Shown here in pieces: positions 20,542-39,135 of a stretch of 64,000 nt of DNA. Under the pieces are notes generated by a model. That model did not search any database and was not told where the DNA came from. It saw nothing but the letters and a program-made list of their open reading frames with translations. Made by a program: the position numbers and the translations under genes. The stretch covers positions 124,001 through 188,000 of IMG/VR virus record IMGVR_UViG_3300046517_002304. The stretch is one strand, 5' to 3'. The stretch's first letter is position 1; every line of letters begins with the position of its first letter.

Positions 20542-21006
20542 TTAGTGTAGTTGGGCCATAGATGAGCGTGAATTAAAAGGCATTACTTTAGATTTAGCTA
20601 ATTTACAAGATTCGATACGGTGAAATCTTCTAGTATCTCCCTTGTATTCGCGAGCAGTAATTCCTATTTCACCAGAAATTAGATCGTGATTTTTAGAGTT
20701 TTCGTGCCATAAGGTTGAGTATGCATTTAAATACCAAAGATCTTTGAAAATTGCGAGAGCATCTGTTTCATTAAATTTAATTATATTTATGCTAAAATAC
20801 GGAACCAAATCTTCCAACTGCTTAAAGGATTGAAACTGTTTTGCATGAGACAAAAGATATCTAAGATTGGTTATAGTCCCATATTCACTGTACTCAATTT
20901 CGGGTAAGTTATTCGGATTATCTGGATTAAATGTTTTGGCATCTAGTCCAGATACTAGTGGTAATGCAGCCAAGCCAGTTAAAATAGCATTTCTTCTAGT
21001 AATCAT
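20542..21006 (-). CDS. protein with twin-arginine-like signal peptide
   Basis: MITRRNAILTGLAALPLVSGLDA. Confidence 0.55.
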   Translation of the reverse strand: MITRRNAILTGLAALPLVSGLDAKTFNPDNPNNLPEIEYSEYGTITNLRYLLSHAKQFQSFKQLEDLVPYFSINIIKFNETDALAIFKDLWYLNAYSTLWHENSKNHDLISGEIGITAREYKGDTRRFHRIESCKLAKSKVMPFNSRSSMAQLH

Positions 21007-22057
21007 AATTTTCTCCAGAACTTGTATTTTGGTGTATCTTACTCACTTGGACAAATGTTGCACACTTGCCCATATCTTTAATTGACGTAGAGCCTATATA
21101 AGCGCAAGATGAACGAAGTCCACCTAAAACTTCTTGTATAATTTTATTAACAGAACCTTTATACTTTATATTCATTACTGCGCCCTCTGATGCCCGGTAG
21201 TCTTTAATTGAACCATATTTAGATTGCGCATAATGCGTTGACATGCCATACCATGTCATTTCTTTTTTAGAACCATCAGGATTAAGTATCCAGTCAGCGG
21301 ATGAACATTCGTCTGTTCCGGAAAGCATAGTTCCGACCATTACGAAGTCGCCGTTCCCGCCAAACACCTTGCATATATCGCCGGGATACTTGCATCCTCC
21401 GTCACTGCATACTAGTCCTAGTCTTTTTTCACCAGACTTAAGGCCATGAGCAACTTGCGAACATTCTTGTACTGCACTGAATGTTCCATATCCTACGCCG
21501 GTAACTAACCGAGTGCGACATGCCGCCCCAGGGCCTATTTGTATTTTTACTATATCAACACCACCATGAATAATTAACTCTTGGACCATTTCGGGAGTTG
21601 TGATATTTCCTGCGCATATAATAGATTCTGGAAAATGATTTCTCACATCTCTACAGAACCCAACAAAACTTTCCATATATCCATTGGGGACATCAATTAC
21701 AATATTTGGTTGGACCCCAGTTAACTTACGATATGTGATTAACTTGTCAAGTCCTTCTTGTTCTTTGCCTATAGACATCCATAGGTAATCGGTCCCGATT
21801 TCGTTGATATAATCTGCTAGAACTTCAGGATTATAATACTTGTGTAGAACTGTAATAATTTTGTTTTTAGAAAGCTCCCTTGCCATGTCAATAGTCGCAA
21901 TGGGAACCATATTAGATGACATAATTGGAATACAGGTTAGCTCTCTTGGCGAGTGGTAAAACCTAAGCTTGCGCTCCAACGATACATCACTTCTACTATT
22001 TAATGTTGACCTTTTTGGTACCATGAGAACGTCATCAAAGTCAAGCTTAAATTCCAT
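20996..22057 (-). CDS. guaC: GMP reductase
   Basis: KLDFDDVLMVPKRSTLNSRSDV, IDVPNGY, IGPGAACRTR, SDGG, YGMS, YRASEG, GGLRSSCAYIG. Confidence 0.92.
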   Translation of the reverse strand: MEFKLDFDDVLMVPKRSTLNSRSDVSLERKLRFYHSPRELTCIPIMSSNMVPIATIDMARELSKNKIITVLHKYYNPEVLADYINEIGTDYLWMSIGKEQEGLDKLITYRKLTGVQPNIVIDVPNGYMESFVGFCRDVRNHFPESIICAGNITTPEMVQELIIHGGVDIVKIQIGPGAACRTRLVTGVGYGTFSAVQECSQVAHGLKSGEKRLGLVCSDGGCKYPGDICKVFGGNGDFVMVGTMLSGTDECSSADWILNPDGSKKEMTWYGMSTHYAQSKYGSIKDYRASEGAVMNIKYKGSVNKIIQEVLGGLRSSCAYIGSTSIKDMGKCATFVQVSKIHQNTSSGENYDY

Positions 22058-23758: not shown

Positions 23759-24739
23759 ATGAATGAAATCAAATTATTCGGAATGCCTGGGACGATCCCT
23801 TTTGCGGAAAAAGTCGCCGCACAACTGGATTTATCGCTAGGCAGATACACCTACAAGCTTTTTGACGACAAAGAGCCGTACATTCGGTCTGACGAGAATG
23901 TACGGAATATGGATGTTTATATCATTAGCTCTCTTTGTTTTACTAAAGATTTTACTCCGTCAGAAAAATTCATGCAGTTATTGATGTTTATCGGTTCATT
24001 GAGGGATGCCTCCGCCGGCAAGATAAACGTGGTCGTGCCGTTTATGGCCTTTTCAAGGATGGATAGGAAAACACAGCCGAGAGAACCAATCGCCACAAAG
24101 TATGTCGCCCAACTCTTAGAATCTGTAGGCACAAATCGTATTATCTGCTGTGATATTCACAACTTAAGTTCTTTCCAGTGCAGTTTTCGTATTAATACAG
24201 ACAATCTAGAAGCCAAAAATTTATTTGCTAAACACGTAGCTGCAACAATAAAAAACCACAAAAACATTGCTGTTCTTAGCCCTGATTCAGGCGGAATGTC
24301 AAGAGCGTCTAGATTCCGTAATGCACTGAACAATATTTTAAAGGAAAATGTTGGACTTGCTTATTTAGATAAAAGTAGAAGTCAGGCGGGTGACGTAAGC
24401 GGAAATCATATCGTTGGTGATGTTAAAGACAAGCAAGTAGTGATTATTGACGACATGATTTCAAGCGGCAAAACAATTAAGCAGTGTGTTGATACAGTCA
24501 AATCACACGGCGGTACAGTTTGGGCAATTTGCGCCACTCATGGTTTATTTGTTGGAAAAGTTAATGATTATCTTGCTGGCGTAAATAAGATAATCATTAC
24601 TGATACGATAAATCATTTTGATGATTTAGATAAAAGTATACTTGAGAAAATTGAAATTGTGTCAACTACGGAAATGTTCGCCAAAGCTATTCGCAGAACG
24701 AATCAGGGCGGTTCTATTAGTTCTTTATTAAAAGACTAA
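23759..24739 (+). CDS. prs: ribose-phosphate pyrophosphokinase (PRPP synthetase)
   Basis: F.DKE, ENVRNMDV, SRMDRK, DIH, SPDSGG, IIDDMISSGKT, ATHGLF, TDTI. Confidence 0.92.
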   Translation: MNEIKLFGMPGTIPFAEKVAAQLDLSLGRYTYKLFDDKEPYIRSDENVRNMDVYIISSLCFTKDFTPSEKFMQLLMFIGSLRDASAGKINVVVPFMAFSRMDRKTQPREPIATKYVAQLLESVGTNRIICCDIHNLSSFQCSFRINTDNLEAKNLFAKHVAATIKNHKNIAVLSPDSGGMSRASRFRNALNNILKENVGLAYLDKSRSQAGDVSGNHIVGDVKDKQVVIIDDMISSGKTIKQCVDTVKSHGGTVWAICATHGLFVGKVNDYLAGVNKIIITDTINHFDDLDKSILEKIEIVSTTEMFAKAIRRTNQGGSISSLLKD

Positions 24740-26826: not shown

Positions 26827-27281
26827 TAGAACTCCTCTACTTTGCCATCACTAAGATAATTAAATACTTTTAATATGTCGTCTTCTTGCGTTTTTCTGCT
26901 ATTTGTAGTTGGTCTTAGTATGTTCTTTTCAAGACTCCATTCACCAGCATAAAAAGTAATGCTAAATGCCGTGCCTTTTTCGCTTGTTAGAAATAATGTA
27001 GATGTTTTTTCTGGTGTGTTAATAGAAACATTTCCGGCATAAGTGCTGCCATTCCGACGCAATGTTAATTTACATTTTGTTTTTTCTGAAATAACCCTTC
27101 TTGTGTTTTTAGGGCCATAGTACATAGCCACCCACAAATCATCGTCTATCTTTACCGTTGTGGATGATGTATCTTCAGGTATTGTAAATTTTATTGTTGT
27201 CTCTAGTTGCGATTCCGGTGACCAAAGGCGCGGGCCGTCATTAAAGCATAGAAATGCTAACGCCAATATTAGTGTATTCAT
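26826..27281 (-). CDS. putative exported protein
   Basis: Hydrophobic N-terminus MNTLILALAFLC. Confidence 0.55.
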   Translation of the reverse strand: MNTLILALAFLCFNDGPRLWSPESQLETTIKFTIPEDTSSTTVKIDDDLWVAMYYGPKNTRRVISEKTKCKLTLRRNGSTYAGNVSINTPEKTSTLFLTSEKGTAFSITFYAGEWSLEKNILRPTTNSRKTQEDDILKVFNYLSDGKVEEF

Positions 27282-27313
27282 AATATGTTATTCGGTAAAT
27301 GATTTGTTAAACT

Positions 27314-27937
27314 TTAGGATTTATTACTATTTTCTAGTTCGGTGTTCCAGTAAAGTTCAGACAGGAATGCATCCCATGACTTCGGCATAACTCTACGATC
27401 AATGTTAAATATACTAAATTTTGGTTTAAATGGTTGTCTAATAAGCTTCATCCCGATTTCATCAGGCGTATTGTTGGCCTTGTACCTATTGCATTTGGTG
27501 CAAGCGATTACGCAATTAAACCAATTAGTTTTTCCATTTCTTGATACCGGTATAATGTGATCTATAGACAGCTCTTTGGTCCCAGGTGTAGCCCCACAAT
27601 ATTGACATTGATTGTTATCTCTGTTGTAGATAGCTCTACGATTAAACGGCACCTGTCTATTGGGAAAGCCATCGTATCTGGTTAAGAGTATGACCTCTGG
27701 AATTCTATATGCGGTACTTCTAGTTTTAATAACACTTTCATTATCGTTAGGACGAATTTGCGACCAATCATTCCATGTATAGGTGGAAAAACCGTTAATC
27801 GCGTCAACTATTCTTGCTTTTGGCTCATTGTTCTTATAGGTGCTGAACAGCTTGGAAATAGCCGACTCTAGAGGATTAATGCCAATAGGCATCCATGACT
27901 TATTGAGAACTAAAACCGGATGAGCGGCGACATACAT
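27314..27937 (-). CDS. HNH endonuclease (McrA-like)
   Basis: VLVLNKSW, PEVI, RD...CQYCG, SIDHIIPVSRNG...W.NCV.AC..CN..K. Confidence 0.9.
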   Translation of the reverse strand: MYVAAHPVLVLNKSWMPIGINPLESAISKLFSTYKNNEPKARIVDAINGFSTYTWNDWSQIRPNDNESVIKTRSTAYRIPEVILLTRYDGFPNRQVPFNRRAIYNRDNNQCQYCGATPGTKELSIDHIIPVSRNGKTNWFNCVIACTKCNRYKANNTPDEIGMKLIRQPFKPKFSIFNIDRRVMPKSWDAFLSELYWNTELENSNKS

Positions 27938-27967
27938 AGCATATTTATAATAGCGACGAACGTATTA

Positions 27968-28213
27968 TTATATGACAGGATCTGTTTCCGGTTGTTTAAC
28001 GATAACTGCTTTTTTATAGTCCAATAAAAGAGATTTATTACTAAAATAGGGAGTTCCATATTTTGTATTTAGAGTAGAATTTTTTACATACTTTTCTGCT
28101 TTGTGCTTTGTCGTGAAGTGAGCCAACAAAGTCCTAACTTCTTCATATATGTCCATGTCGGCTTCATCATCAAATCCGACAGACACTTTTTTGACTCCAT
28201 ATAAATCGTACAT
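27968..28213 (-). CDS. hypothetical protein
   Basis: 81 aa. Confidence 0.5.
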   Translation of the reverse strand: MYDLYGVKKVSVGFDDEADMDIYEEVRTLLAHFTTKHKAEKYVKNSTLNTKYGTPYFSNKSLLLDYKKAVIVKQPETDPVI

Positions 28214-28233
28214 GTTCTAATTTCTTTCTCAAC

Positions 28234-28509
28234 CTATGTTAACTCATCGCCATAATAGCCCGCGGGAATTTCAGTCCATTTCATTCCTGACACCGGCACA
28301 TCTTTTGCCTTCTTCTTATTCTTTGCTTTCTTAGCAGTTATTTTTTTCACTGGCGCGAAATCAAAGGCAGACAACGGCTTTAATCCCACGAATGCTTTTC
28401 TTGGATCGTTTCGGTTACGAAAGCATTTGTCGCATATGTCATAGTTACACGCAACATCTTCAACGGTATTTGCGTTTGACATAGGTTGTCCACAGTAATC
28501 GCACTTCAT
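28234..28509 (-). CDS. zinc-ribbon protein
   Basis: MKCDYCG...ICDKC; N-terminus shared with 29483-29728. Confidence 0.6.
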   Translation of the reverse strand: MKCDYCGQPMSNANTVEDVACNYDICDKCFRNRNDPRKAFVGLKPLSAFDFAPVKKITAKKAKNKKKAKDVPVSGMKWTEIPAGYYGDELT

Positions 28510-28727
28510 GATCGCTCCTTTATTTCTGCTAATCTTTGTTTTCTATGAGGCTCTAGATGTCTTTCGTGCCAGCTTTTGTCTCTCTGGCTGCTAAGGTCAA
28601 TCCAATGTTGAAAATTTTCTGGCTCTACCGGCTCCTCTCCATCGGCAAATTCCACAAAATCAGGCACACATTCTCCCCCTTTAATGTTTGGGTAATACTT
28701 AAGTTTTATATAATACTTCAATTTCAT
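28506..28727 (-). CDS. hypothetical protein
   Basis: 73 aa. Confidence 0.5.
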   Translation of the reverse strand: MKLKYYIKLKYYPNIKGGECVPDFVEFADGEEPVEPENFQHWIDLSSQRDKSWHERHLEPHRKQRLAEIKERS

Positions 28728-28729
28728 TT

Positions 28730-29467
28730 TTAGCTCCTGAGTTTATTAAAAATTGATTCGCTTAATCGTTCTTTTAACTCTAGGTTCATAGACGGAATCT
28801 CGCCGCCCACAAAGCAAGAGTATAAATAACACAAATTATCCATACCGTTTTTATCGGTGGTTGCCTTCTTTAACTTTAAACTAATTTCTTCATAACTGTC
28901 GTCTAAAAACAAACAACCGCCTGGATTTGATTTTGACATTTTAACAGATGGATTTTTTAAATCCTTAATTCTTCCCACTACAATCTCTGGTTCAGGTATA
29001 ACAAAATCTTCGCTGAAAACTCTGTTATATTTTTTTAGTAGCTTAGATGCATACTGAAGATGCTGTGTTTGATCTTCCCCAACAAGTACTTTTTTAAATC
29101 CTGCTACGTCGTGCGTCATCAAAACTGGATACGTTAATAAATGGGCGCTTGGATTAGACGACGACTTGTATTGTGTCATTCTTTCTAAATCGCCCATTGC
29201 GGATATTGAAAGAAGTTTGAAGTAAAATTCGGCATTAAAAACATCCTTTTGAATTATGATTTTAGAAACGCCAAATTTGTTCAGTAGCTCAATGCTATTC
29301 TTGATTTCCTGCCCAGGCGCATGATAGTTAGCAACTAAAACGCTAGCTCCAGCTTTTCCTGGCAGTATTACCGAGAAATAGTGACCAAGATGCAATTTGC
29401 CTGTTGGCCTGAACCCGCACAATTTATCACCAAAGACACACCATGTTTCTTCTCCTGAAAACCCCAT
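28730..29467 (-). CDS. trpS: compact tryptophanyl-tRNA synthetase (true start may be ATG 29444 via +1 frameshift)
   Basis: GFRPTGKLHLGH (HIGH), LERMTQYK, LLTYPVLMTHD, VGEDQTQH, KMSKS. Confidence 0.88.
   Translation of the reverse strand: MGFSGEETWCVFGDKLCGFRPTGKLHLGHYFSVILPGKAGASVLVANYHAPGQEIKNSIELLNKFGVSKIIIQKDVFNAEFYFKLLSISAMGDLERMTQYKSSSNPSAHLLTYPVLMTHDVAGFKKVLVGEDQTQHLQYASKLLKKYNRVFSEDFVIPEPEIVVGRIKDLKNPSVKMSKSNPGGCLFLDDSYEEISLKLKKATTDKNGMDNLCYLYSCFVGGEIPSMNLELKERLSESIFNKLRS
29427..29456 (-). promoter_or_regulatory. SD + 5-codon ORF (MVCLW*) with candidate +1 frameshift site CUU-UGG
   Basis: AGGAG-N7-ATG GTG TGT CTT TGG TGA; +1 slip at CTT.T joins the trpS frame (GGT GAT AAA TTG). Confidence 0.55.
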
Positions 29468-29493
29468 TTTACACTAAAAACTTTACTTGTCAA
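29466..29493 (-). promoter_or_regulatory. sigma70-like promoter for trpS
   Basis: TTGACA (29493-29488)-N16-TAAAAT (29471-29466). Confidence 0.55.
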
Positions 29494-29728
29494 GGCCCTT
29501 AGATGCAGAATAGCGACAGCGCAAGTAGTAAATCAATCCCGTTGGACCAAGTAATGGCTGCACACTTACAAGCTTATTGGCTATGGATGCCGTATTTAAA
29601 TTTTTAAATAGGGGAATAGACATATGAGAAAACATGTTAATATTTTTCCCGCTACACTTTGCGCATACCTGATGTTCATTTAATGGAACCAGTTTATCGG
29701 ATTTATTTCCACAGTAATCGCATATCAT
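29483..29728 (-). CDS. zinc ribbon fused to a major-capsid-protein segment
   Basis: MICDYCG..CAKC followed by 42 aa with 27 identities to MCP residues 71-112. Confidence 0.8.
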   Translation of the reverse strand: MICDYCGNKSDKLVPLNEHQVCAKCSGKNINMFSHMSIPLFKNLNTASIANKLVSVQPLLGPTGLIYYLRCRYSASKGLDK

Positions 29729-29770
29729 AATATACTTATCGTATTATGCTTTAAGACACATAAATAGTAT

Positions 29771-31204
29771 ATGCGATTTCGTGCCTACCTAGAGTCGTTC
29801 GGCTCGTTTAATTATAGGGTTCCCAATGACCCAGAAGAGCAATTATACGACTTCTATATGCTTAATTGGCTTAGGGGCAGAAATTCGCTTTATAACAAAG
29901 CTAATCAACATGGGTTGGCTATCTCACCTAAAAAGCCAGAATATGGCGGTGACATGGGCCATGAAGACAAAATAGATTATATGTTAGATGAAGTCGCACA
30001 TACTCTAATCCCCAAGCTTAAATCCGACTTCCTTAAGGCAGTGCTATTCGGCATTACTGCGGAAATGCGGCATGTGCCTCGTGAAATGGGAGATTATAAA
30101 AATTTTTCGGCTAATATAGCAGACGGCGTCGGCGAGAGATACGCAAAAATATACAATGATTTTTTTAGTTATTATAATTATGATAATTTTAAAGACAAAA
30201 TGGCAGAATTTAATAAATCTGTTCCTGTAAAAGACAGAATGTTTAGAAATGTTAAAAATTTCGTAGATCCGCATAATGCCGATTTTCTTCATTATAATAT
30301 GACCGGTAGAATGGCCGCTTATCGCAGTATGTTAAAAGGCGGCTCTACTGAGAGAGATTTCGTAGAAATGGCTAAATTTACGTTTGCGAACGGTAGTTGG
30401 CAGGCTAGCTATGGTGGCCAACCATGGGCAAATGCTTGTGATGGATGGCTGCAATTATATGATTCAAAAGGTGAAAATTCTGATATAGTCGCCATTGATC
30501 ACATTTATGATCTACAGCATAATAATGGTTCTGTTTTAAATAAAGTAGCTAAGTATATTAAGGGGGGAAATACTACATGGCTCAAAACTGCTTTGGATGA
30601 TAAGGCGCAGTCTAATGGTCCGATGGATATAGTGGATAAAGTATCGTCAAGCATGAGAGAACTAGCTTTGCCGGCCATAAAATTAAAATTTGGAACAACG
30701 TATCAAGACAAGGCATCTGCGGAAATTTCACCATATAAAGGCTCTTATGAAAACCAATATTTTTTGACTGGCCATGACTGGAGTGCCTACGAAGGAGCTT
30801 ATCATAGTTCTTCAATTCCTGAATTAAAGTTAGTGCGACTTGGGCTATATCTTGGTTGGTCGCCTAAAAAGGTTACATTAAAGGATATTGAAAGGTTAAA
30901 AAATACTTTAAAAGTTCCTCAGTTAGATGACGCGCGGATAAAGAAAGTGCTTACATCTGAATACAATAATAAAAGAAACATAGAAACTGGTAACTTTAAA
31001 TATGTAAAGGTTAAATTAAGTAGTGATTTAATACGGGAAATAGACAAATTTATAAGGCTAAAAGACACCTGGCTATATGAAGCAGTAGTTAAAAAAATAG
31101 ACAGTGAAACTCATTATGGATATGCAGCATCAAAATACTTATATGGCTACTGCGCATCATTAGTCGGTAAACAAAGAAGTATAGATGAGGTCGTAGAGCC
31201 ATGA
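29771..31204 (+). CDS. putative internal head protein, paralog 1
   Basis: 477 aa; MRFRAYLES; YGGQPW..ACD.W, IDHIYDLQHNNG; TAAATA 4 nt upstream. Confidence 0.7.
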   Translation: MRFRAYLESFGSFNYRVPNDPEEQLYDFYMLNWLRGRNSLYNKANQHGLAISPKKPEYGGDMGHEDKIDYMLDEVAHTLIPKLKSDFLKAVLFGITAEMRHVPREMGDYKNFSANIADGVGERYAKIYNDFFSYYNYDNFKDKMAEFNKSVPVKDRMFRNVKNFVDPHNADFLHYNMTGRMAAYRSMLKGGSTERDFVEMAKFTFANGSWQASYGGQPWANACDGWLQLYDSKGENSDIVAIDHIYDLQHNNGSVLNKVAKYIKGGNTTWLKTALDDKAQSNGPMDIVDKVSSSMRELALPAIKLKFGTTYQDKASAEISPYKGSYENQYFLTGHDWSAYEGAYHSSSIPELKLVRLGLYLGWSPKKVTLKDIERLKNTLKVPQLDDARIKKVLTSEYNNKRNIETGNFKYVKVKLSSDLIREIDKFIRLKDTWLYEAVVKKIDSETHYGYAASKYLYGYCASLVGKQRSIDEVVEP

Positions 31205-32607
31205 GATTCTCTCAATTTATAGAATCTTTTGGTTCATTTAATTATCGTGTTCCCGATGATCCAGAAGAACAATTATATGACTTCTATATGTTGAATTTGC
31301 TAAGAGGCAGAAATTCGCTTTATAACAAGGCTAATCAACATGGCTTAACCATAATGCCTAAGAAGCCAGAGTACGGCGGCGAAATGAATCATGAAGATAA
31401 AGTAGACTACATGCTGGATGAAGTGGCAAAAGTTCTTATACCAAAACTTAAATCAGATTTATTAGAAGCGGTTCTTTTTAGTATAACGGCAGAATTTAGA
31501 CATGGTGGCGACCGAGATACGCAAGAAATACCAATGAGCCATATGACAGATATGATTCGTAGACAAATGGGCGCTAAATATTCTAGAATATTTAGCGATT
31601 TTTTTAACCATTTAGACTCTTCTTTTGATGCATCGTTTAGGCCAAAAATTCAAGCAAATTCTCAATTGATGAAAAACACTATTAACAGTACTCCTATCTA
31701 TAACAGTAGAAGATTGGCATCTTATTCATCGATGGAAAAAAGTACCCATAATGAAAAAGACTTTGTAGAAATGGCTAAATTTGTTTTTGGGGAGGGGGAT
31801 TGGGACAAAGATTACGGTGGTCCTTCATGGGAACAGGCTTGTGATGCATGGCTCCAACTGTATAATTCTAAATCAGAAGATTCAGACATTATAGCGATTG
31901 ATCATATGTACGATATAGAGCACAATACAGGGAACATTCTTGACAAGAGCAATCACTTTTTAAAGAACGGGCAATTTACATGGCTCAGTAATGCCCTTAA
32001 TAAAAAAGCTAGAATTACTTCTCCGATGCAAATCATTGACGATATTTCTCCAGCAATGACACAAATAGCCTTGCCTGCCATAAAGTTAAAGTATGGCCAA
32101 ACATTAGAAGATAAAATGAAGGCTGATACATTTAAAACACAGATCCCAGGAGCTGGGTTTGATGACTTAATTAAAAAGGAATTTGACGAAAATCAAGGAA
32201 TATATGATGCAGGTATTCCTGAACTAAAAATGGCTAGAACTCTTAGGGGAATTTTAGCTGCTTATAAAGTGCGTAGAATTGACTTTAGAATCATTGAATT
32301 AGCTAAGTCTAAAATTAGAGTCCCATTAGACAGTCAAAAAATTAAACAGTTCTTTCAGCAAGAGTATCAAAATTGCAGAAATATAGAAACTGGTAACTTT
32401 GGTCATGTTAAGGTGCTTATGACTAAAGATTTAATATACGAAATACAAAAAAATTTAGAAGATCCATATGGCCATAGATCAGGAATAAAAGACAGAATAG
32501 CCGGTGAAACAAATTATGACGATGAAGTTATTAAGAGTTTAGTAGATTACTGTGAAAAGTTAGTTGAAGATGGCGGAAATGTTAGCTCAATATTAGCGGT
32601 TCGCTAA
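31201..32607 (+). CDS. putative internal head protein, paralog 2
   Basis: 468 aa; MRFSQFIES; first ~100 aa very similar to paralog 1. Confidence 0.7.
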   Translation: MRFSQFIESFGSFNYRVPDDPEEQLYDFYMLNLLRGRNSLYNKANQHGLTIMPKKPEYGGEMNHEDKVDYMLDEVAKVLIPKLKSDLLEAVLFSITAEFRHGGDRDTQEIPMSHMTDMIRRQMGAKYSRIFSDFFNHLDSSFDASFRPKIQANSQLMKNTINSTPIYNSRRLASYSSMEKSTHNEKDFVEMAKFVFGEGDWDKDYGGPSWEQACDAWLQLYNSKSEDSDIIAIDHMYDIEHNTGNILDKSNHFLKNGQFTWLSNALNKKARITSPMQIIDDISPAMTQIALPAIKLKYGQTLEDKMKADTFKTQIPGAGFDDLIKKEFDENQGIYDAGIPELKMARTLRGILAAYKVRRIDFRIIELAKSKIRVPLDSQKIKQFFQQEYQNCRNIETGNFGHVKVLMTKDLIYEIQKNLEDPYGHRSGIKDRIAGETNYDDEVIKSLVDYCEKLVEDGGNVSSILAVR

Positions 32608-33137
32608 GCTTCATTACCCCAGCAATACCAGCCTTCTCTTTTAGCTCTAGCATACATGTCTAATCGTGGTTCTGGCGATAGCTTTTCTACTAGCTTATAG
32701 AAATCATCTGGTTTCTCGCTATGCCTGCCTCTATCCCATGAAAAGCATGTTCCACTAGTAGCCTGTGAATGCCGTCCACCCATTCCAAAAGGATTTCCGT
32801 GTCTACTTCCTACCCGAGACACAAGTATATGTTCTGTATTACATCTAAAACGTCCTACGCCAAGCCCTGGCTTCTTCCAAGTCCAAAGTATGATTGGTTT
32901 AGCCTTCCATGCGCCAGCGACCGTATAGGCCCAATCTACGTGTTGTGCAAGGCACCATATGTATAAGTGTGCCTGTTTGGCAATCGGCGGCTTGATAGAA
33001 CAGATTTCGTCTAAGCTTAATGTGTTATAATGAGATTGTGGACTGCCCTTGGGCGCTTTTCCATTAATAATTGACATTTCTGGTGTCCAAGGCGGGTCAA
33101 CCACTATTGTGCGAAACTCTACATCAGGAAATTGCAT
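32604..33137 (-). CDS. MT-A70 family adenine methyltransferase
   Basis: IVVDPPW, LYIW, W.KPGLGVG..R.NTEH, HSEKP, MYAR..REGW..WGNE. Confidence 0.9.
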   Translation of the reverse strand: MQFPDVEFRTIVVDPPWTPEMSIINGKAPKGSPQSHYNTLSLDEICSIKPPIAKQAHLYIWCLAQHVDWAYTVAGAWKAKPIILWTWKKPGLGVGRFRCNTEHILVSRVGSRHGNPFGMGGRHSQATSGTCFSWDRGRHSEKPDDFYKLVEKLSPEPRLDMYARAKREGWYCWGNEA

Positions 33138-37683: not shown

Positions 37684-39135
37684 TTAGATGCTGAAATTGT
37701 TGATAGCGATGGTAGCGTAGAAGCGTGCACCGTTATTTAGTAATTTAAGTCCGTATCTTGTCATCAAGCCTCTACGTGGGCAGAAGCTATTAGGGTCAAG
37801 TACCAGTGGAGTCTGCATTAAAGGAACGTATGGGCAATAGAAGAACCCTGAATCCATATAAGTATCACCCTTATAACCCATGAGTAGGTTATTGGTTGGG
37901 AACTGTGGATCCTTATAAAGCTTCCAACGGTTGCTGACAGTACCGACATACTGAACGCCTAGCGAGCTAGTGAACGATTCTGAAGGTGCTGGAGCGAAAC
38001 CTGCTGTGGCTGTCTCAAAGATTGAGGCAACTTCAGGTGAGCAGATAATCCAGTTTGCACCGCTACGTAGCGTTTTCTTATGGATGATGTTGCTAACCTG
38101 TGAAACCTTAACGAATAGGGCTTCGTACTTTTCCTTAACGGTATCACCTAGGGCAGTGTTGTAATCCCAAGTGACGTTAGTACCAGCGTTGTTACGGAGG
38201 TTGGTGATGATTTCACGGTCAATTTCAAGATTGATTTCTTGAGCAAGAACGGTCGTCAATTCCTGTTCCGCATCTAGCGAATACTGTGAACGTAAGTCCT
38301 GTTGAGCTTCAAAGCTCCAGACAGCGCGTAGCTTACGGGTAACGGCGGTAATGGTTTCCTGTTCAACCGTTAGATTAACTTCGGGCTGATCAGTATTGCA
38401 TTCCATGTTATAGTCGTAAGTGACGACGATGCTGTTAGTGCTAGGATCGCTTGACCAAGTTAGAGTGATGGCACCAGTCGTGAGATTGATGCTACCAGCG
38501 GTAACGTTTGGTGAATTGCTCGTAGAACTAATAGTAAAGGTACCCGACGCATCAATGGTGAAGGTCTGAATGGCAGTGCTACCCTGGTAGATAGTACCTG
38601 ATTCAGTTCCAGCAAGAATTGGCGTGTGCTTTAGAGTGTAAGTAAGAGTAGTTGTACCACCAGCGTTGGTGACGGTTTCAAGACTGACAGTCTGGCTAGA
38701 ATAGAAAATATCAAGATTTACTAGACCGCTTGAGAGCTGTTGTAGTGAAAGAGCATCGTCTGTTGGGAAACTAGACTTGTTAGTCGCACCTAGTGTAGCA
38801 CCCTTGTCAGTCGCATAGCGAAAGCGGAGGTAATAAACTAGACCGACTGGACCGAGTAATGGCTGAACAGAAACGATCTTGTTAGCGATTAGCTGTGGGA
38901 AAATACGACGAACGAGGGGGATACTAATACGTTTGAAGTTAGCGACATCGCCTGCGGTCGTGCTTGAAGATTCGTTGAGGTTGCATGATAGTTCCTGATT
39001 TTCCATTAGGATGGCAGTGTTCTGACGAACTGTCTTATCCTTAATGTCGTTCAGGAGACCACGGTCGCCCCAAGTTTTTTCGCACTTGGCACCTTCGTGT
39101 AAAAATTCCCCTTTGGCTGTACCAAAATTTGACAT
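37684..39135 (-). CDS. gp23: major capsid protein, T4 gp23 family
   Basis: ENQE, VRR..P.LIA...VQP..GP.G, RKLRAVWSFEAQQDL, EINLEIDREI, FYCPYVPL, F.P..GLMTRYG; probable cleavage at LNE55. Confidence 0.96.
   Translation of the reverse strand: MSNFGTAKGEFLHEGAKCEKTWGDRGLLNDIKDKTVRQNTAILMENQELSCNLNESSSTTAGDVANFKRISIPLVRRIFPQLIANKIVSVQPLLGPVGLVYYLRFRYATDKGATLGATNKSSFPTDDALSLQQLSSGLVNLDIFYSSQTVSLETVTNAGGTTTLTYTLKHTPILAGTESGTIYQGSTAIQTFTIDASGTFTISSTSNSPNVTAGSINLTTGAITLTWSSDPSTNSIVVTYDYNMECNTDQPEVNLTVEQETITAVTRKLRAVWSFEAQQDLRSQYSLDAEQELTTVLAQEINLEIDREIITNLRNNAGTNVTWDYNTALGDTVKEKYEALFVKVSQVSNIIHKKTLRSGANWIICSPEVASIFETATAGFAPAPSESFTSSLGVQYVGTVSNRWKLYKDPQFPTNNLLMGYKGDTYMDSGFFYCPYVPLMQTPLVLDPNSFCPRRGLMTRYGLKLLNNGARFYATIAINNFSI

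What the first reader, a model, noticed from the sequence alone, without database searches (positions are those of the whole stretch)
29427..29493. Candidate Trp-sensing +1 ribosomal frameshift controlling phage TrpRS (prfB-like CUU-UGG)
Seen: the in-frame ATG (29467) has no SD and lies inside the -10 box of a TTGACA-N16-TAAAAT promoter, so that transcript would not contain it. The only SD-led start is AGGAG-N7-ATG (29444), which reads ATG GTG TGT CTT TGG TGA (MVCLW*). A +1 slip from CUU to UUU continues GGU GAU AAA UUG in the TrpRS frame and gives MVCLGDKLCGFRPTG, a normal-length TrpRS N-terminus. The layout AUGGUG-UGU-CUU-UGG parallels prfB AGGGGG-UAU-CUU-UGA, with the Trp codon in place of the stop. 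Established: RF2 autoregulates by this slip, and hungry codons promote frameshifting. Inference: the synthetase is made only when charged tRNA-Trp is scarce, for example under starvation or host attack on TrpRS (HipT-type kinases target TrpS).
Basis: partly seen in the sequence, partly recalled or inferred. Interest (0 to 1): 0.88.

Follow-up and report, generated by a model that had tools for sequence, protein, structure and literature searches.

The report
Frameshift switch on phage tryptophan-tRNA synthetase
A huge soil phage, and most of its relatives, appear able to make their miniature tryptophanyl-tRNA synthetase only if the ribosome slips forward one base at CUU just before a tryptophan codon, which would be a built-in gauge of charged tRNA-Trp and a design not described before for any synthetase gene.

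Summary
On the minus strand, AGGAG-N7-ATG (29444) opens ATG GTG TGT CTT TGG TGA, and the synthetase frame is +1 of it.

I recovered DNA for 18 other family members at about 46-64% protein identity.
- Fourteen carry the same element: an SD-led ATG, then GGTG-NNN-CTT-TGG one base behind the synthetase frame.
- Seven of these have no ATG/GTG/TTG in the synthetase frame before the catalytic HIGH motif. Five of the seven have no table-11 start of any kind.
- The four relatives without the motif each have a plain in-frame ATG four codons before the core.
- Across 14 motif genes the coding body has no invariant nucleotide run longer than 3 nt, and none of 71 conserved degenerate codons is fixed. Yet A-GGTG-NNN-CTTTGG is invariant.
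- Stops in the two frames confine the shift to NNN-CTT-TGG.

The geometry matches prfB (SD-like, 3 nt, CUU_U) with a sense A-site codon as in Ty1.

The protein is a compact TrpRS-like core (HIGH, KMSKS, GEDQ, indole-binding Asp) with a reduced C-terminal domain.

The frameshift itself is strongly supported. Its dependence on tryptophan is inferred, not shown. I found no published precedent.

The parts
29488..29493 (-). -35-like hexamer TTGACA
   Evidence: Sequence. Part of the best sigma-70 consensus match (11/12) in 27000-31500. Function unverified and not conserved in relatives.
29466..29471 (-). -10-like hexamer TAAAAT, overlapping the annotated in-frame ATG (29467-29465)
   Evidence: A transcript from this promoter would start near 29459 and would lack that ATG.
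29452..29456 (-). Shine-Dalgarno AGGAG, 7 nt before the ATG at 29444
   Evidence: Every motif-bearing homologue has a purine-rich SD 4-10 nt before its 0-frame ATG.
29427..29444 (-). 0-frame mini-ORF ATG GTG TGT CTT TGG TGA (MVCLW*)
   Evidence: Equivalent mini-ORFs of 5-11 codons occur in 14 homologues. Their sequence is not conserved after TGG and the stop position varies.
29439..29442 (-). Invariant GGTG, a candidate internal SD-like stimulator 3 nt before CTT
   Evidence: Invariant in 15/15, including genes where the ATG lies 1-2 codons further upstream (L126, L127). Predicted pairing to a generic anti-SD is -5.4 kcal/mol, in the top ~5% of gene-body 8-mers. The spacing equals that of prfB.
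29430..29435 (-). Shift site CTT_TGG: P-site CUU slips to UUU while the A-site UGG awaits Trp-tRNA
   Evidence: Invariant in 15/15. The shift window is bounded on the left by a +1-frame TGA in L108 and on the right by the 0-frame TGA in the window. The Gly codon that follows is GGT/GGC/GGG/GGA, so +1-frame coding starts here.
28730..29434 (-). +1-frame body of the TrpRS-like gene (TTT GGT GAT AAA TTG TGC ... TAA). Predicted product MVCL+GDKLCGFRPTG..., 237 aa
   Evidence: Pfam PF00579 1e-28. Best PDB sequence hits are bacterial TrpRS at 4e-20. AF2 pLDDT 88.7 with the fold starting at residue 15 of the annotated ORF. Foldseek top 50 are TrpRS except one design built on a TrpRS scaffold.
29420..29422 (-). 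TTG Leu codon before CGFRPTG, the alternative start used by gene callers in some homologues
   Evidence: TTG in 7/15 motif genes. It is CTG, CTT, CTC or ATT in the rest, so it is not a conserved start.

Best explanation
Proposed mechanism. The TrpRS-like gene is expressed by a programmed +1 ribosomal frameshift.
1. Ribosomes start at the SD-led ATG 29444 and read Met-Val-Cys-Leu.
2. With peptidyl-tRNA-Leu on CUU in the P site and UGG in the A site, the tRNA re-pairs one base forward on UUU.
3. GGU (Gly) is then decoded, and translation continues in the synthetase frame to give a 237-aa enzyme, MVCL-GDKLCGFRPTG...
4. Ribosomes that decode UGG normally stop at once at UGA and release a pentapeptide.

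The invariant GGUG 3 nt upstream probably pairs with the anti-Shine-Dalgarno tail of 16S rRNA, as the SD-like element of prfB does, and promotes the slip.

The competing event is delivery of Trp-tRNA-Trp to UGG. The fraction of ribosomes that shift should therefore rise when charged tRNA-Trp is scarce and fall when it is plentiful. That is negative feedback on an enzyme that makes Trp-tRNA-Trp.

Shown by comparative sequence analysis: the element, its frame relations, its invariance, and the lack of any other start in many homologues.
Inferred: the P-site CUU slip (by analogy with prfB and Ty1), the role of GGUG, and above all the Trp dependence.

My split of confidence is about 0.9 that the +1 frameshift at CUU_UGG is the route of expression, and about 0.65-0.7 that it is tuned by Trp-tRNA supply.
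For: Conservation:
- Fifteen family genes at a median 61% aa identity carry SD-ATG...GGTG-NNN-CTT-TGG one base behind the synthetase frame.
- The coding body of the 14 canonical ones has no invariant nt run longer than 3, and 0 of 71 conserved degenerate codons are fixed. A-GGTG-NNN-CTTTGG is invariant.
- CTT is fixed although Leu has six codons. In the +1 frame, the wobble C of the preceding codon and the wobble T of TTT are fixed, so neither frame's coding explains it.

The frameshift is obligatory in many:
- 7/15 have no ATG/GTG/TTG in the synthetase frame upstream of the core. L007, L008, L109, L126 and L127 have no table-11 start of any kind.
- 69/120 family proteins were called truncated after HIGH.

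Complementary pattern and boundaries:
- All 4 motif-less relatives have an in-frame ATG 4 codons before the anchor.
- Stops in the two frames (L108 and the window) confine the shift to NNN-CTT-TGG.
- The next codon is GGN with all four synonymous forms, while the 0-frame codon there is stop/Leu/Val/Lys/Phe.

Phylogeny: the basal lineages are in-frame. A crown clade of about 108 rows holds all verified motif genes and only 3 apparent reversions, although a 1-nt deletion would fix the frame.

Mechanistic background and other support:
- The geometry equals prfB: SD-like, 3 nt, CTTT. CUU_U is the most efficient +1 site and hungry A-site codons drive +1 shifts, as in Ty1 CUU_AGG_C.
- No RNA structure is needed or found.
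- Residues 1-12 of the annotated ORF have pLDDT below 50 and homology starts at residue 16-18.
- The site is identical in four independent runs.
- The enzyme keeps TrpRS signatures, including the indole-binding Asp, which matches the Trp codon at the site.
Against: - No experimental or expression data. No RNA run was listed, and there is no proteomic junction peptide.
- In this window the synthetase frame also has an upstream ATG (29467) and a TTG (29422) with a weak SD-like GGTGAT, so here the shift is not strictly obligatory.
- GGUG is only a 4-bp anti-SD match (-5.4 kcal/mol). The host and its 16S tail are unknown.
- One variant (L114) has GGTG directly next to CTT and also has an in-frame ATG.
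- UGG might be conserved only because the +1 frame needs U then GGN. However, Gly is absent from the in-frame homologues, so that constraint looks weak.
- The protein scores below NCBIfam's trpS cut-off (91.6 against 176.75 bits) and has a reduced C-terminal domain. Its substrate, and therefore the feedback loop, is unproven.
Confidence: 0.74

Rival explanations
1. The +1 frameshift is real but constitutive. It would be a fixed-ratio or 'frozen' shift, for example a tolerated ancestral indel or a way to set low expression, with no meaningful response to Trp-tRNA levels.
For: All the comparative evidence for the frameshift is equally compatible with this. UGG is a single, generally slow codon, so a basal shift would occur anyway. 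GGN after the slip also constrains two of the three bases of UGG.
Against: A Trp codon in the A site of a Trp-specific enzyme's own shift site is exactly what an autoregulatory design predicts. Any U-starting slow codon or a stop would serve a fixed-ratio device, yet UGG is invariant in 15/15. The frame could be repaired by a single-base deletion, yet only about 3 of 108 crown-clade members appear to have done so, which argues that the device itself is selected. Gly at the junction is absent in the in-frame homologues, so GG is not imposed by protein function.
Confidence: 0.15
2. The mini-ORF is a leader peptide. The synthetase would be started independently at the Leu codon before CGFRPTG (TTG 29422 here) by termination-reinitiation coupling, with TGA/TAA lying 1-5 nt from the TTG.
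For: The window, L106, L108, L110, L115, L125 and L117 have TTG at that codon, often as TAA-A-TTG. Gene callers use it. The window has GGTGAT 3 nt upstream of it.
Against: The codon is CTG (L005, L006), CTT (L007, L008, L109), CTC (L126, L127) or ATT (L114) in the others. In L005, L006, L117 and L109 the leader stop lies beyond it. This model does not explain the invariance of GGTG-NNN-CTT or the fixed wobble bases.
Confidence: 0.06
3. In this particular phage the gene is simply translated from the annotated in-frame ATG 29467 (245 aa), and the motif is a vestige.
For: The frame is open from 29467. Read-through transcripts from the upstream gene would contain this ATG.
Against: There is no SD before it and it overlaps the -10 hexamer. 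Residues 1-15 have no homologue support and pLDDT below 50. The motif is perfectly intact here, with a strong AGGAG-N7 serving the other ATG.
Confidence: 0.04
4. Artefact or pseudogene: a sequencing or assembly indel, or a decaying gene.
For: None beyond the fact that there is a frame break.
Against: The site is identical in contigs of four independent runs. The same break sits at the same place in 15 diverged genes from unrelated samples. The downstream frame is under strong purifying selection (183 invariant nt and 71 conserved degenerate codons with free wobble).
Confidence: 0.01

Closest known systems
prfB (release factor 2) autoregulatory +1 frameshift, AGGGGG-UAU-CUU_UGA_C
   Same: Short SD-led 0-frame ORF. 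CUU_U slippery P-site codon. SD-like element exactly 3 nt upstream. Functional protein entirely in the +1 frame with no start of its own. The A-site codon is one whose decoding depends on the gene's own product. No downstream RNA structure. In-frame versions occur in a minority of homologues.
   Different: The A-site codon is a sense codon (UGG) read by an aminoacyl-tRNA, not a stop read by a protein factor. The shift is at codon 4-6 rather than 25. The SD-like element is GGUG rather than AGGGGG. The 0-frame stop is not part of the site and lies 0-6 codons later. The gene is a phage synthetase, not RF2.
Yeast Ty1 / ABP140 +1 frameshift, CUU_AGG_C ('hungry' sense codon)
   Same: P-site CUU slips +1 while a slowly decoded sense codon waits in the A site. 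The heptamer differs by one base (CUU_UGG_C in 9/15 here). The +1 codon is GGC Gly in both. No RNA structure is required.
   Different: The system is eukaryotic. tRNA-Leu(UAG) re-pairs on UUA, not UUU. Slowness comes from a permanently rare tRNA-Arg(CCU), not from the charging state. It sets a Gag:Pol ratio and is not feedback on the decoding machinery. There is no SD-like stimulator.
Amino-acid-sensing control of bacterial synthetase and biosynthetic genes (T-box riboswitch on trpS, trp/pheST leader-peptide attenuation)
   Same: The physiological logic is the same: expression rises when the cognate charged tRNA is scarce, and a short leader containing the cognate codon acts as the sensor.
   Different: Those act on transcription termination through alternative RNA hairpins or direct tRNA binding. 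Here no conserved structure exists, there is a single Trp codon, and the read-out is the reading frame itself.
Bacterial tryptophanyl-tRNA synthetase (TIGR00233, e.g. PDB 1i6k, 5v0i)
   Same: Class Ic Rossmann core. HIGH-type motif (HLGH), KMSKS, GEDQxQH, and the Asp aligned with the indole-binding Asp132 of the B. stearothermophilus enzyme. Foldseek TM 0.80 over the query, and the top 50 hits are all TrpRS apart from one design built on a TrpRS scaffold.
   Different: About 230 aa against about 330. The C-terminal helical (anticodon-binding) domain is reduced to three helices, and the connective region is shortened. It scores below the NCBIfam equivalog cut-off. It is encoded in huge-phage tRNA arrays.

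Membership tests
prfB-type autoregulatory +1 programmed frameshift | Short SD-led 0-frame ORF, with the functional protein in the +1 frame and no initiation codon of its own | tested here: met
   7/15 have no ATG/GTG/TTG in the synthetase frame, and 5 have no table-11 start at all. An SD lies 4-10 nt before the 0-frame ATG in every case.
prfB-type autoregulatory +1 programmed frameshift | CUU_U slippery sequence | tested here: met
   CTTT is invariant in 15/15 and is not explained by coding in either frame.
prfB-type autoregulatory +1 programmed frameshift | Internal SD-like element 3 nt upstream of CUU | tested here: inconclusive
   GGTG is invariant at exactly 3 nt in 14/15 (0 nt in L114). 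It is only a 4-bp match, -5.4 kcal/mol to an assumed E. coli-type anti-SD, and the host 16S is unknown.
prfB-type autoregulatory +1 programmed frameshift | The A-site codon is an in-frame stop (UGA) decoded by the gene's own product RF2 | tested here: not met
   The A-site codon is the sense codon UGG in 15/15. A stop follows immediately only in the window. So it works like prfB but is not a member of the 'shifty stop' class, and the gene is not prfB.
prfB-type autoregulatory +1 programmed frameshift | Frameshift efficiency inversely related to the product's activity | not testable with these tools
   Needs reporter assays under Trp-tRNA limitation or excess.
Hungry-codon +1 frameshift (Ty1 type) | P-site tRNA able to re-pair in +1, plus a slowly decoded sense codon in the A site, with no RNA structure | tested here: met
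   CUU_UGG_N. No conserved structure (-3 kcal/mol, no covariation). Background. That UGG is slow is inferred, not measured.
Tryptophanyl-tRNA synthetase (class Ic) | HIGH and KMSKS signatures, the GxDQ motif, and the Trp-specific Asp | tested here: met
   HLGH, KMSKS (K176-K179), G130/D132/Q133/H136 and D120 are invariant in the family and align with B. stearothermophilus TrpRS.
Tryptophanyl-tRNA synthetase (class Ic) | Score above the curated equivalog threshold (TIGR00233) | tested here: not met
   91.6 bits against a cut-off of 176.75. I therefore file it as TrpRS-like.
Tryptophanyl-tRNA synthetase (class Ic) | Full C-terminal anticodon-binding helical domain | tested here: not met
   About 230 aa against about 330. 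Foldseek TM over the target is only 0.61. The model has three short helices after KMSKS.
Tryptophanyl-tRNA synthetase (class Ic) | Trp activation and tRNA-Trp charging | not testable with these tools
   Needs a biochemical assay.
Leader-peptide transcription attenuation / T-box | Alternative terminator/antiterminator hairpins or a tRNA-binding leader RNA | tested here: not met
   No conserved structure. No terminator-like site near the gene.

The most novel reading that the evidence does not exclude
A large clade of huge-phage TrpRS-like genes may use the ribosome itself as a sensor of charged tRNA-Trp. A single UGG placed in the A site of a prfB-like CUU_U slip site would turn synthetase production on when Trp-tRNA-Trp runs short during infection, whether through starvation, host shut-off, or host defences that hit TrpRS or tRNA-Trp. 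This would be the first natural synthetase gene autoregulated by frameshifting at its own cognate codon. It would also be a second, independently evolved bacterial-type autoregulatory +1 frameshift besides prfB.
Probability: 0.6. Interest if true: 0.9.

Novelty: new variant of a known kind. Interest (0 to 1): 0.84.

Why it matters
Among bacterial chromosomal genes, prfB is the textbook case of an autoregulatory +1 frameshift, and the recoding review searched here names no other. Sense-codon 'hungry' frameshifting is known mainly from yeast elements and from laboratory starvation experiments.

If this reading is right, there are four consequences.
- It is a naturally selected, deeply conserved case (over 100 diverged genes) in which the charging level of one tRNA is read directly by the ribosome and converted into synthesis of the enzyme that restores it. 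This is a new solution to synthetase homeostasis, alongside T-boxes, attenuators and operator mimicry.
- It shows that huge phages regulate their imported translation apparatus rather than merely carrying it.
- It gives a compact (about 30 nt) portable Trp-tRNA sensor that can be tested directly in reporters.
- It exposes a systematic annotation error. More than half of the family is called N-terminally truncated, without the HIGH motif, so pipelines would score these genes as fragments.

Tried and rejected
Searches that gave little:
- The megablast of the region against GenBank phages found nothing. tblastn there gave only hits below 37% identity.
It gave only one near-family locus, L026. Those 80 loci did serve as a motif-free negative control.
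- A motif-independent degenerate DNA pattern for CG[FL]RPTGxLHxGHYF found only the six viral contigs already known and one MAG contig.
- One look-up (P0021, JGI) returned no DNA.
- No RNA-seq run was listed, so TSS and expression could not be examined.

Explanations rejected:
- A downstream stimulatory RNA structure. RNAalifold gives -3 kcal/mol and no covariation.
- Protein-level conservation of 'WCVFG' in the synthetase frame. L108 has TGA inside it. L007, L126 and L127 have a stop immediately before it. The fixed wobble bases are not explained by coding.
- Transcriptional slippage, because there are only three Ts.
- A P-site slip of tRNA-Trp from UGG to GGN. The re-pairing is poor and the following 0-frame codon is not conserved.
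- Reinitiation at the Leu codon, because it is not a start codon in 8/15.

Literature: searches and the Atkins 2016 recoding review showed no synthetase example. I recall an E. coli study (Sipley and Goldman, PNAS 1993) that replaced the RF2 UGA with UGG, but I could not retrieve it, so I do not rely on it.
Full report
WHAT IS IN THE WINDOW.

The finding lies on the minus strand. The ORF 28730-29467(-) encodes 245 aa with a class-I W/Y synthetase domain (Pfam PF00579, 1e-28).

- TTGACA 29493-29488, 16 nt, TAAAAT 29471-29466, overlapping the in-frame ATG 29467.
- AGGAG 29456-29452, 7 nt, ATG 29444.
- Then GTG TGT CTT(29435-33) TGG(29432-30) TGA(29429-27).
- The synthetase frame is +1 of this mini-ORF. 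A CUU-to-UUU slip gives MVCL|GDKLCGFRPTG..., 237 aa in all.

The promoter is the best consensus match (11/12) in 4.5 kb. Promoter-like hits overall are at chance level.

Contigs of four independent soil and rhizosphere runs are identical across the site, with no indel. No RNA run was listed.

WHAT GENOME THIS IS.

The window belongs to a contig of about 511 kb from a huge phage (IMG/VR). It has a Gp23-type capsid gene at 37684-39135(-), IMPDH-like and PRPP-synthetase genes, and an MT-A70 methylase. GC is about 38%. GenBank phages contain no close relative.

THE FAMILY.

The large protein collection holds thousands of relatives. The top 120 are 48-64% identical (apart from the window's own protein), 200-286 aa long, and many sit on contigs of 200-670 kb.

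Their called N-termini are very uneven.
- 69/120 start after the HIGH motif (MHLGHY..., MIKPGQ..., MLVANYHAP...).
- 14 start exactly at the Leu before CGFRPTG.
- 9 extend upstream through 'W-C-x-F-G'.
- About 14 have a tidy MK[TSRAV][LI]CG start.

THE COMPARATIVE TEST.

I obtained DNA for 18 further family members.

Fourteen carry an SD, an ATG, and then GGTG-NNN-CTT-TGG in the frame one base behind the synthetase frame. These are L005, L006, L007, L008, L106, L108, L109, L110, L115, L117, L125, L126, L127, and L114 as a variant with GGTG abutting CTT.

In the GC-rich L126 and L127 the ATG lies one or two codons further upstream (ATG ACG GTG..., ATG ACT ACG GTG...), yet GGTG-TGT-CTT-TGG is unchanged. 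So the conserved core is GGTG-N3-CTTTGG and not merely 'ATGGTG'.

The four members without the motif (L118, L112, L009, L026) all have an in-frame ATG exactly four codons before the CG/VG anchor: MKTLCGF, MKSLCGL, MKTIVGI and MKTLVGI.

Of the 15 motif genes (window included), seven have no ATG/GTG/TTG in the synthetase frame between its upstream stop and the catalytic core. Five of those (L007, L008, L109, L126, L127) have none of the rarer table-11 starts either. In those genes a change of frame is the only route to a protein with a HIGH motif.

IS THE CONSERVATION MORE THAN CODING?

The 14 canonical motif genes have a median 61% aa identity (range 54-98%). From the junction Gly codon to the stop, the longest invariant nucleotide run is 3 (ATG codons). 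None of the 71 columns with an invariant residue and a degenerate codon keeps one codon. Against that saturated background, A-GGTG-NNN-CTTTGG is invariant.

Neither frame's coding accounts for this.
- In the 0 frame, Leu is always CTT out of six codons.
- In the +1 frame, the wobble C of the preceding codon and the wobble T of TTT never vary.
- The 'Cys' codon of the apparent W-C-x-F-G is TGA in L108.
- L007, L126 and L127 have a stop immediately before that stretch.

Directly after the site, the +1 codon is GGT, GGC, GGG or GGA, which is synonymous variation. The 0-frame codon there is stop, Leu, Val, Lys or Phe. Selection therefore changes frame exactly at CTT_TGG.

The +1-frame TGA of L108 and the 0-frame TGA of the window together confine the shift to NNN-CTT-TGG.

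The bare motif occurs once in the 64-kb window (0.10 expected). It occurs once per family locus, always at the 5' end, and in none of 80 ordinary bacterial trpS loci.

PHYLOGENY.

On a tree of 125 rows rooted on L009/L026, the basal lineages are in-frame. A crown clade of about 108 rows (SH-aLRT 93) contains every DNA-verified motif gene, in all of its sub-clades. It has only three apparent in-frame reversions: P0009 (verified by DNA), P0017 and P0071.

This was a quick tree and the rooting is an assumption, so 'one gain, few losses' is an inference. Even so, a one-base deletion would repair the frame, so its rarity argues that the device itself is selected.

MECHANISM.

The geometry equals that of prfB: an SD-like element, 3 nt, then CTTT. 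According to the recoding review, CUU_U is by far the most efficient +1 site, and slow-to-decode 'hungry' A-site codons drive +1 shifts, as in Ty1 CUU_AGG_C. The element here is CUU_UGG_C in 9/15, one base away from Ty1, with the same +1 codon GGC.

No conserved RNA structure exists around the site. GGUG pairs with a generic anti-SD at -5.4 kcal/mol, which is in the top ~5% of gene-body 8-mers and similar to several of the initiation SDs. That makes it credible but modest, and its role is inferred.

A slip of tRNA-Trp itself is unlikely, because it re-pairs poorly on GGN and the following 0-frame codon is not conserved.

The A-site codon is the single Trp codon and the gene encodes a Trp-specific-looking synthetase. 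The simplest reading is negative feedback: scarce Trp-tRNA-Trp leaves the A site empty for longer, more ribosomes slip, and more enzyme is made. This last step is inference.

THE PROTEIN.

- Sequence searches hit only TrpRS (PDB 4e-20).
- The family keeps HLGH, KMSKS, GEDQxQH and the Asp aligned with the indole-binding Asp of the Bacillus enzyme.
- The AlphaFold model is confident (pLDDT 88.7). Residues 1-12 of the annotated ORF are below 50, and the first strand is at residue 15.
- Foldseek's top 50 are TrpRS apart from one design built on a TrpRS scaffold. TM is 0.80 over the query but 0.61 over the target.
- It scores below NCBIfam's trpS cut-off.

It is therefore a miniaturised TrpRS-like enzyme with a reduced anticodon-binding domain. 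Its activity is untested.

In all relatives the gene lies within same-strand tRNA arrays, six of them with tRNA-Trp(CCA) nearby. The window has no tRNA at all, and here the gene has what looks like its own promoter.

RIVALS.

- A constitutive shift cannot be excluded without experiments (0.15).
- Reinitiation at the Leu codon fails in 8/15 genes (0.06).
- Direct initiation at ATG 29467 lacks an SD, homology and structural support (0.04).
- Artefact or pseudogene is excluded by the independent assemblies and by purifying selection (0.01).

COMPARISON AND NOVELTY.

It works like prfB (architecture, feedback logic) and like Ty1 (sense hungry codon). It is a member of neither: the A-site codon is not a stop, and the system is bacterial and SD-assisted.

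Full-text searches and the 2016 recoding review revealed no synthetase gene controlled in this way. The library lacks most subscription journals, so absence is not proof.

I rate it a new variant of a known kind, of high interest.

Noticed in passing
window 29483-29728 (-): The 81-aa ORF just upstream of the synthetase gene is a CxxC...CxxC zinc ribbon fused to a copy (49% identity, E 5e-18) of residues 53-112 of the phage's own Gp23-type major capsid protein (37684-39135, -). This may be a decoy, a regulator, or a remnant of a capsid-gene duplication.
   Followed up: partly
window 29771-31204 (+) and 31201-32607 (+): Two tandem paralogues (477 and 468 aa, 47% identical, with nearly identical first 100 residues) overlap by ATGA. 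Neither has a Pfam match.
   Followed up: partly
L005-L008, L106-L127 (flanks of the homologous genes); window 1-64000: In every relative with DNA, the TrpRS-like gene is embedded in a same-strand tRNA gene array, often starting 30-45 nt after a tRNA. tRNA-Trp(CCA) lies within 2.5 kb in L005, L006, L007, L108, L115 and L126. The window has no tRNA in 64 kb, so here the gene has been moved out of the array.
   Followed up: partly
Family proteins P0001-P0120: Gene callers mis-annotate the family. 69 of 120 are called with starts after the HIGH motif and 14 at the Leu codon, because the true start is in another frame. These would look like fragments in databases.
   Followed up: yes
L005 1316-1390, L006 1769-1843 and 1941-2013, L108 785-856: ARAGORN reports tRNA-like genes with two-base 'anticodons' (tg, ca, tc) inside the phage tRNA arrays. 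These may be unusual anticodon loops or mis-folded predictions.
   Followed up: no
window 27314-27937 (-): An HNH endonuclease (Pfam HNH_5, 5e-14) lies about 0.8 kb downstream of the synthetase gene on the same strand, after four small ORFs, one of which has a ZZ-type zinc-finger hit.
   Followed up: no
window 20996-22057 (-), 23759-24739 (+), 32604-33137 (-): Auxiliary metabolism and modification genes: IMPDH/GMP-reductase-like (4e-54), ribose-phosphate pyrophosphokinase (PRPP synthetase), and an MT-A70 family methyltransferase.
   Followed up: no
L114 1990-2030 (P0096): A variant leader, ATG AAT GCG AGG GTG CTT TGG CTC TAA, has GGTG directly next to CTT (no 3-nt spacer). An in-frame ATG lies four bases after the first ATG. 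This may be an intermediate between the frameshift state and the in-frame state.
   Followed up: partly
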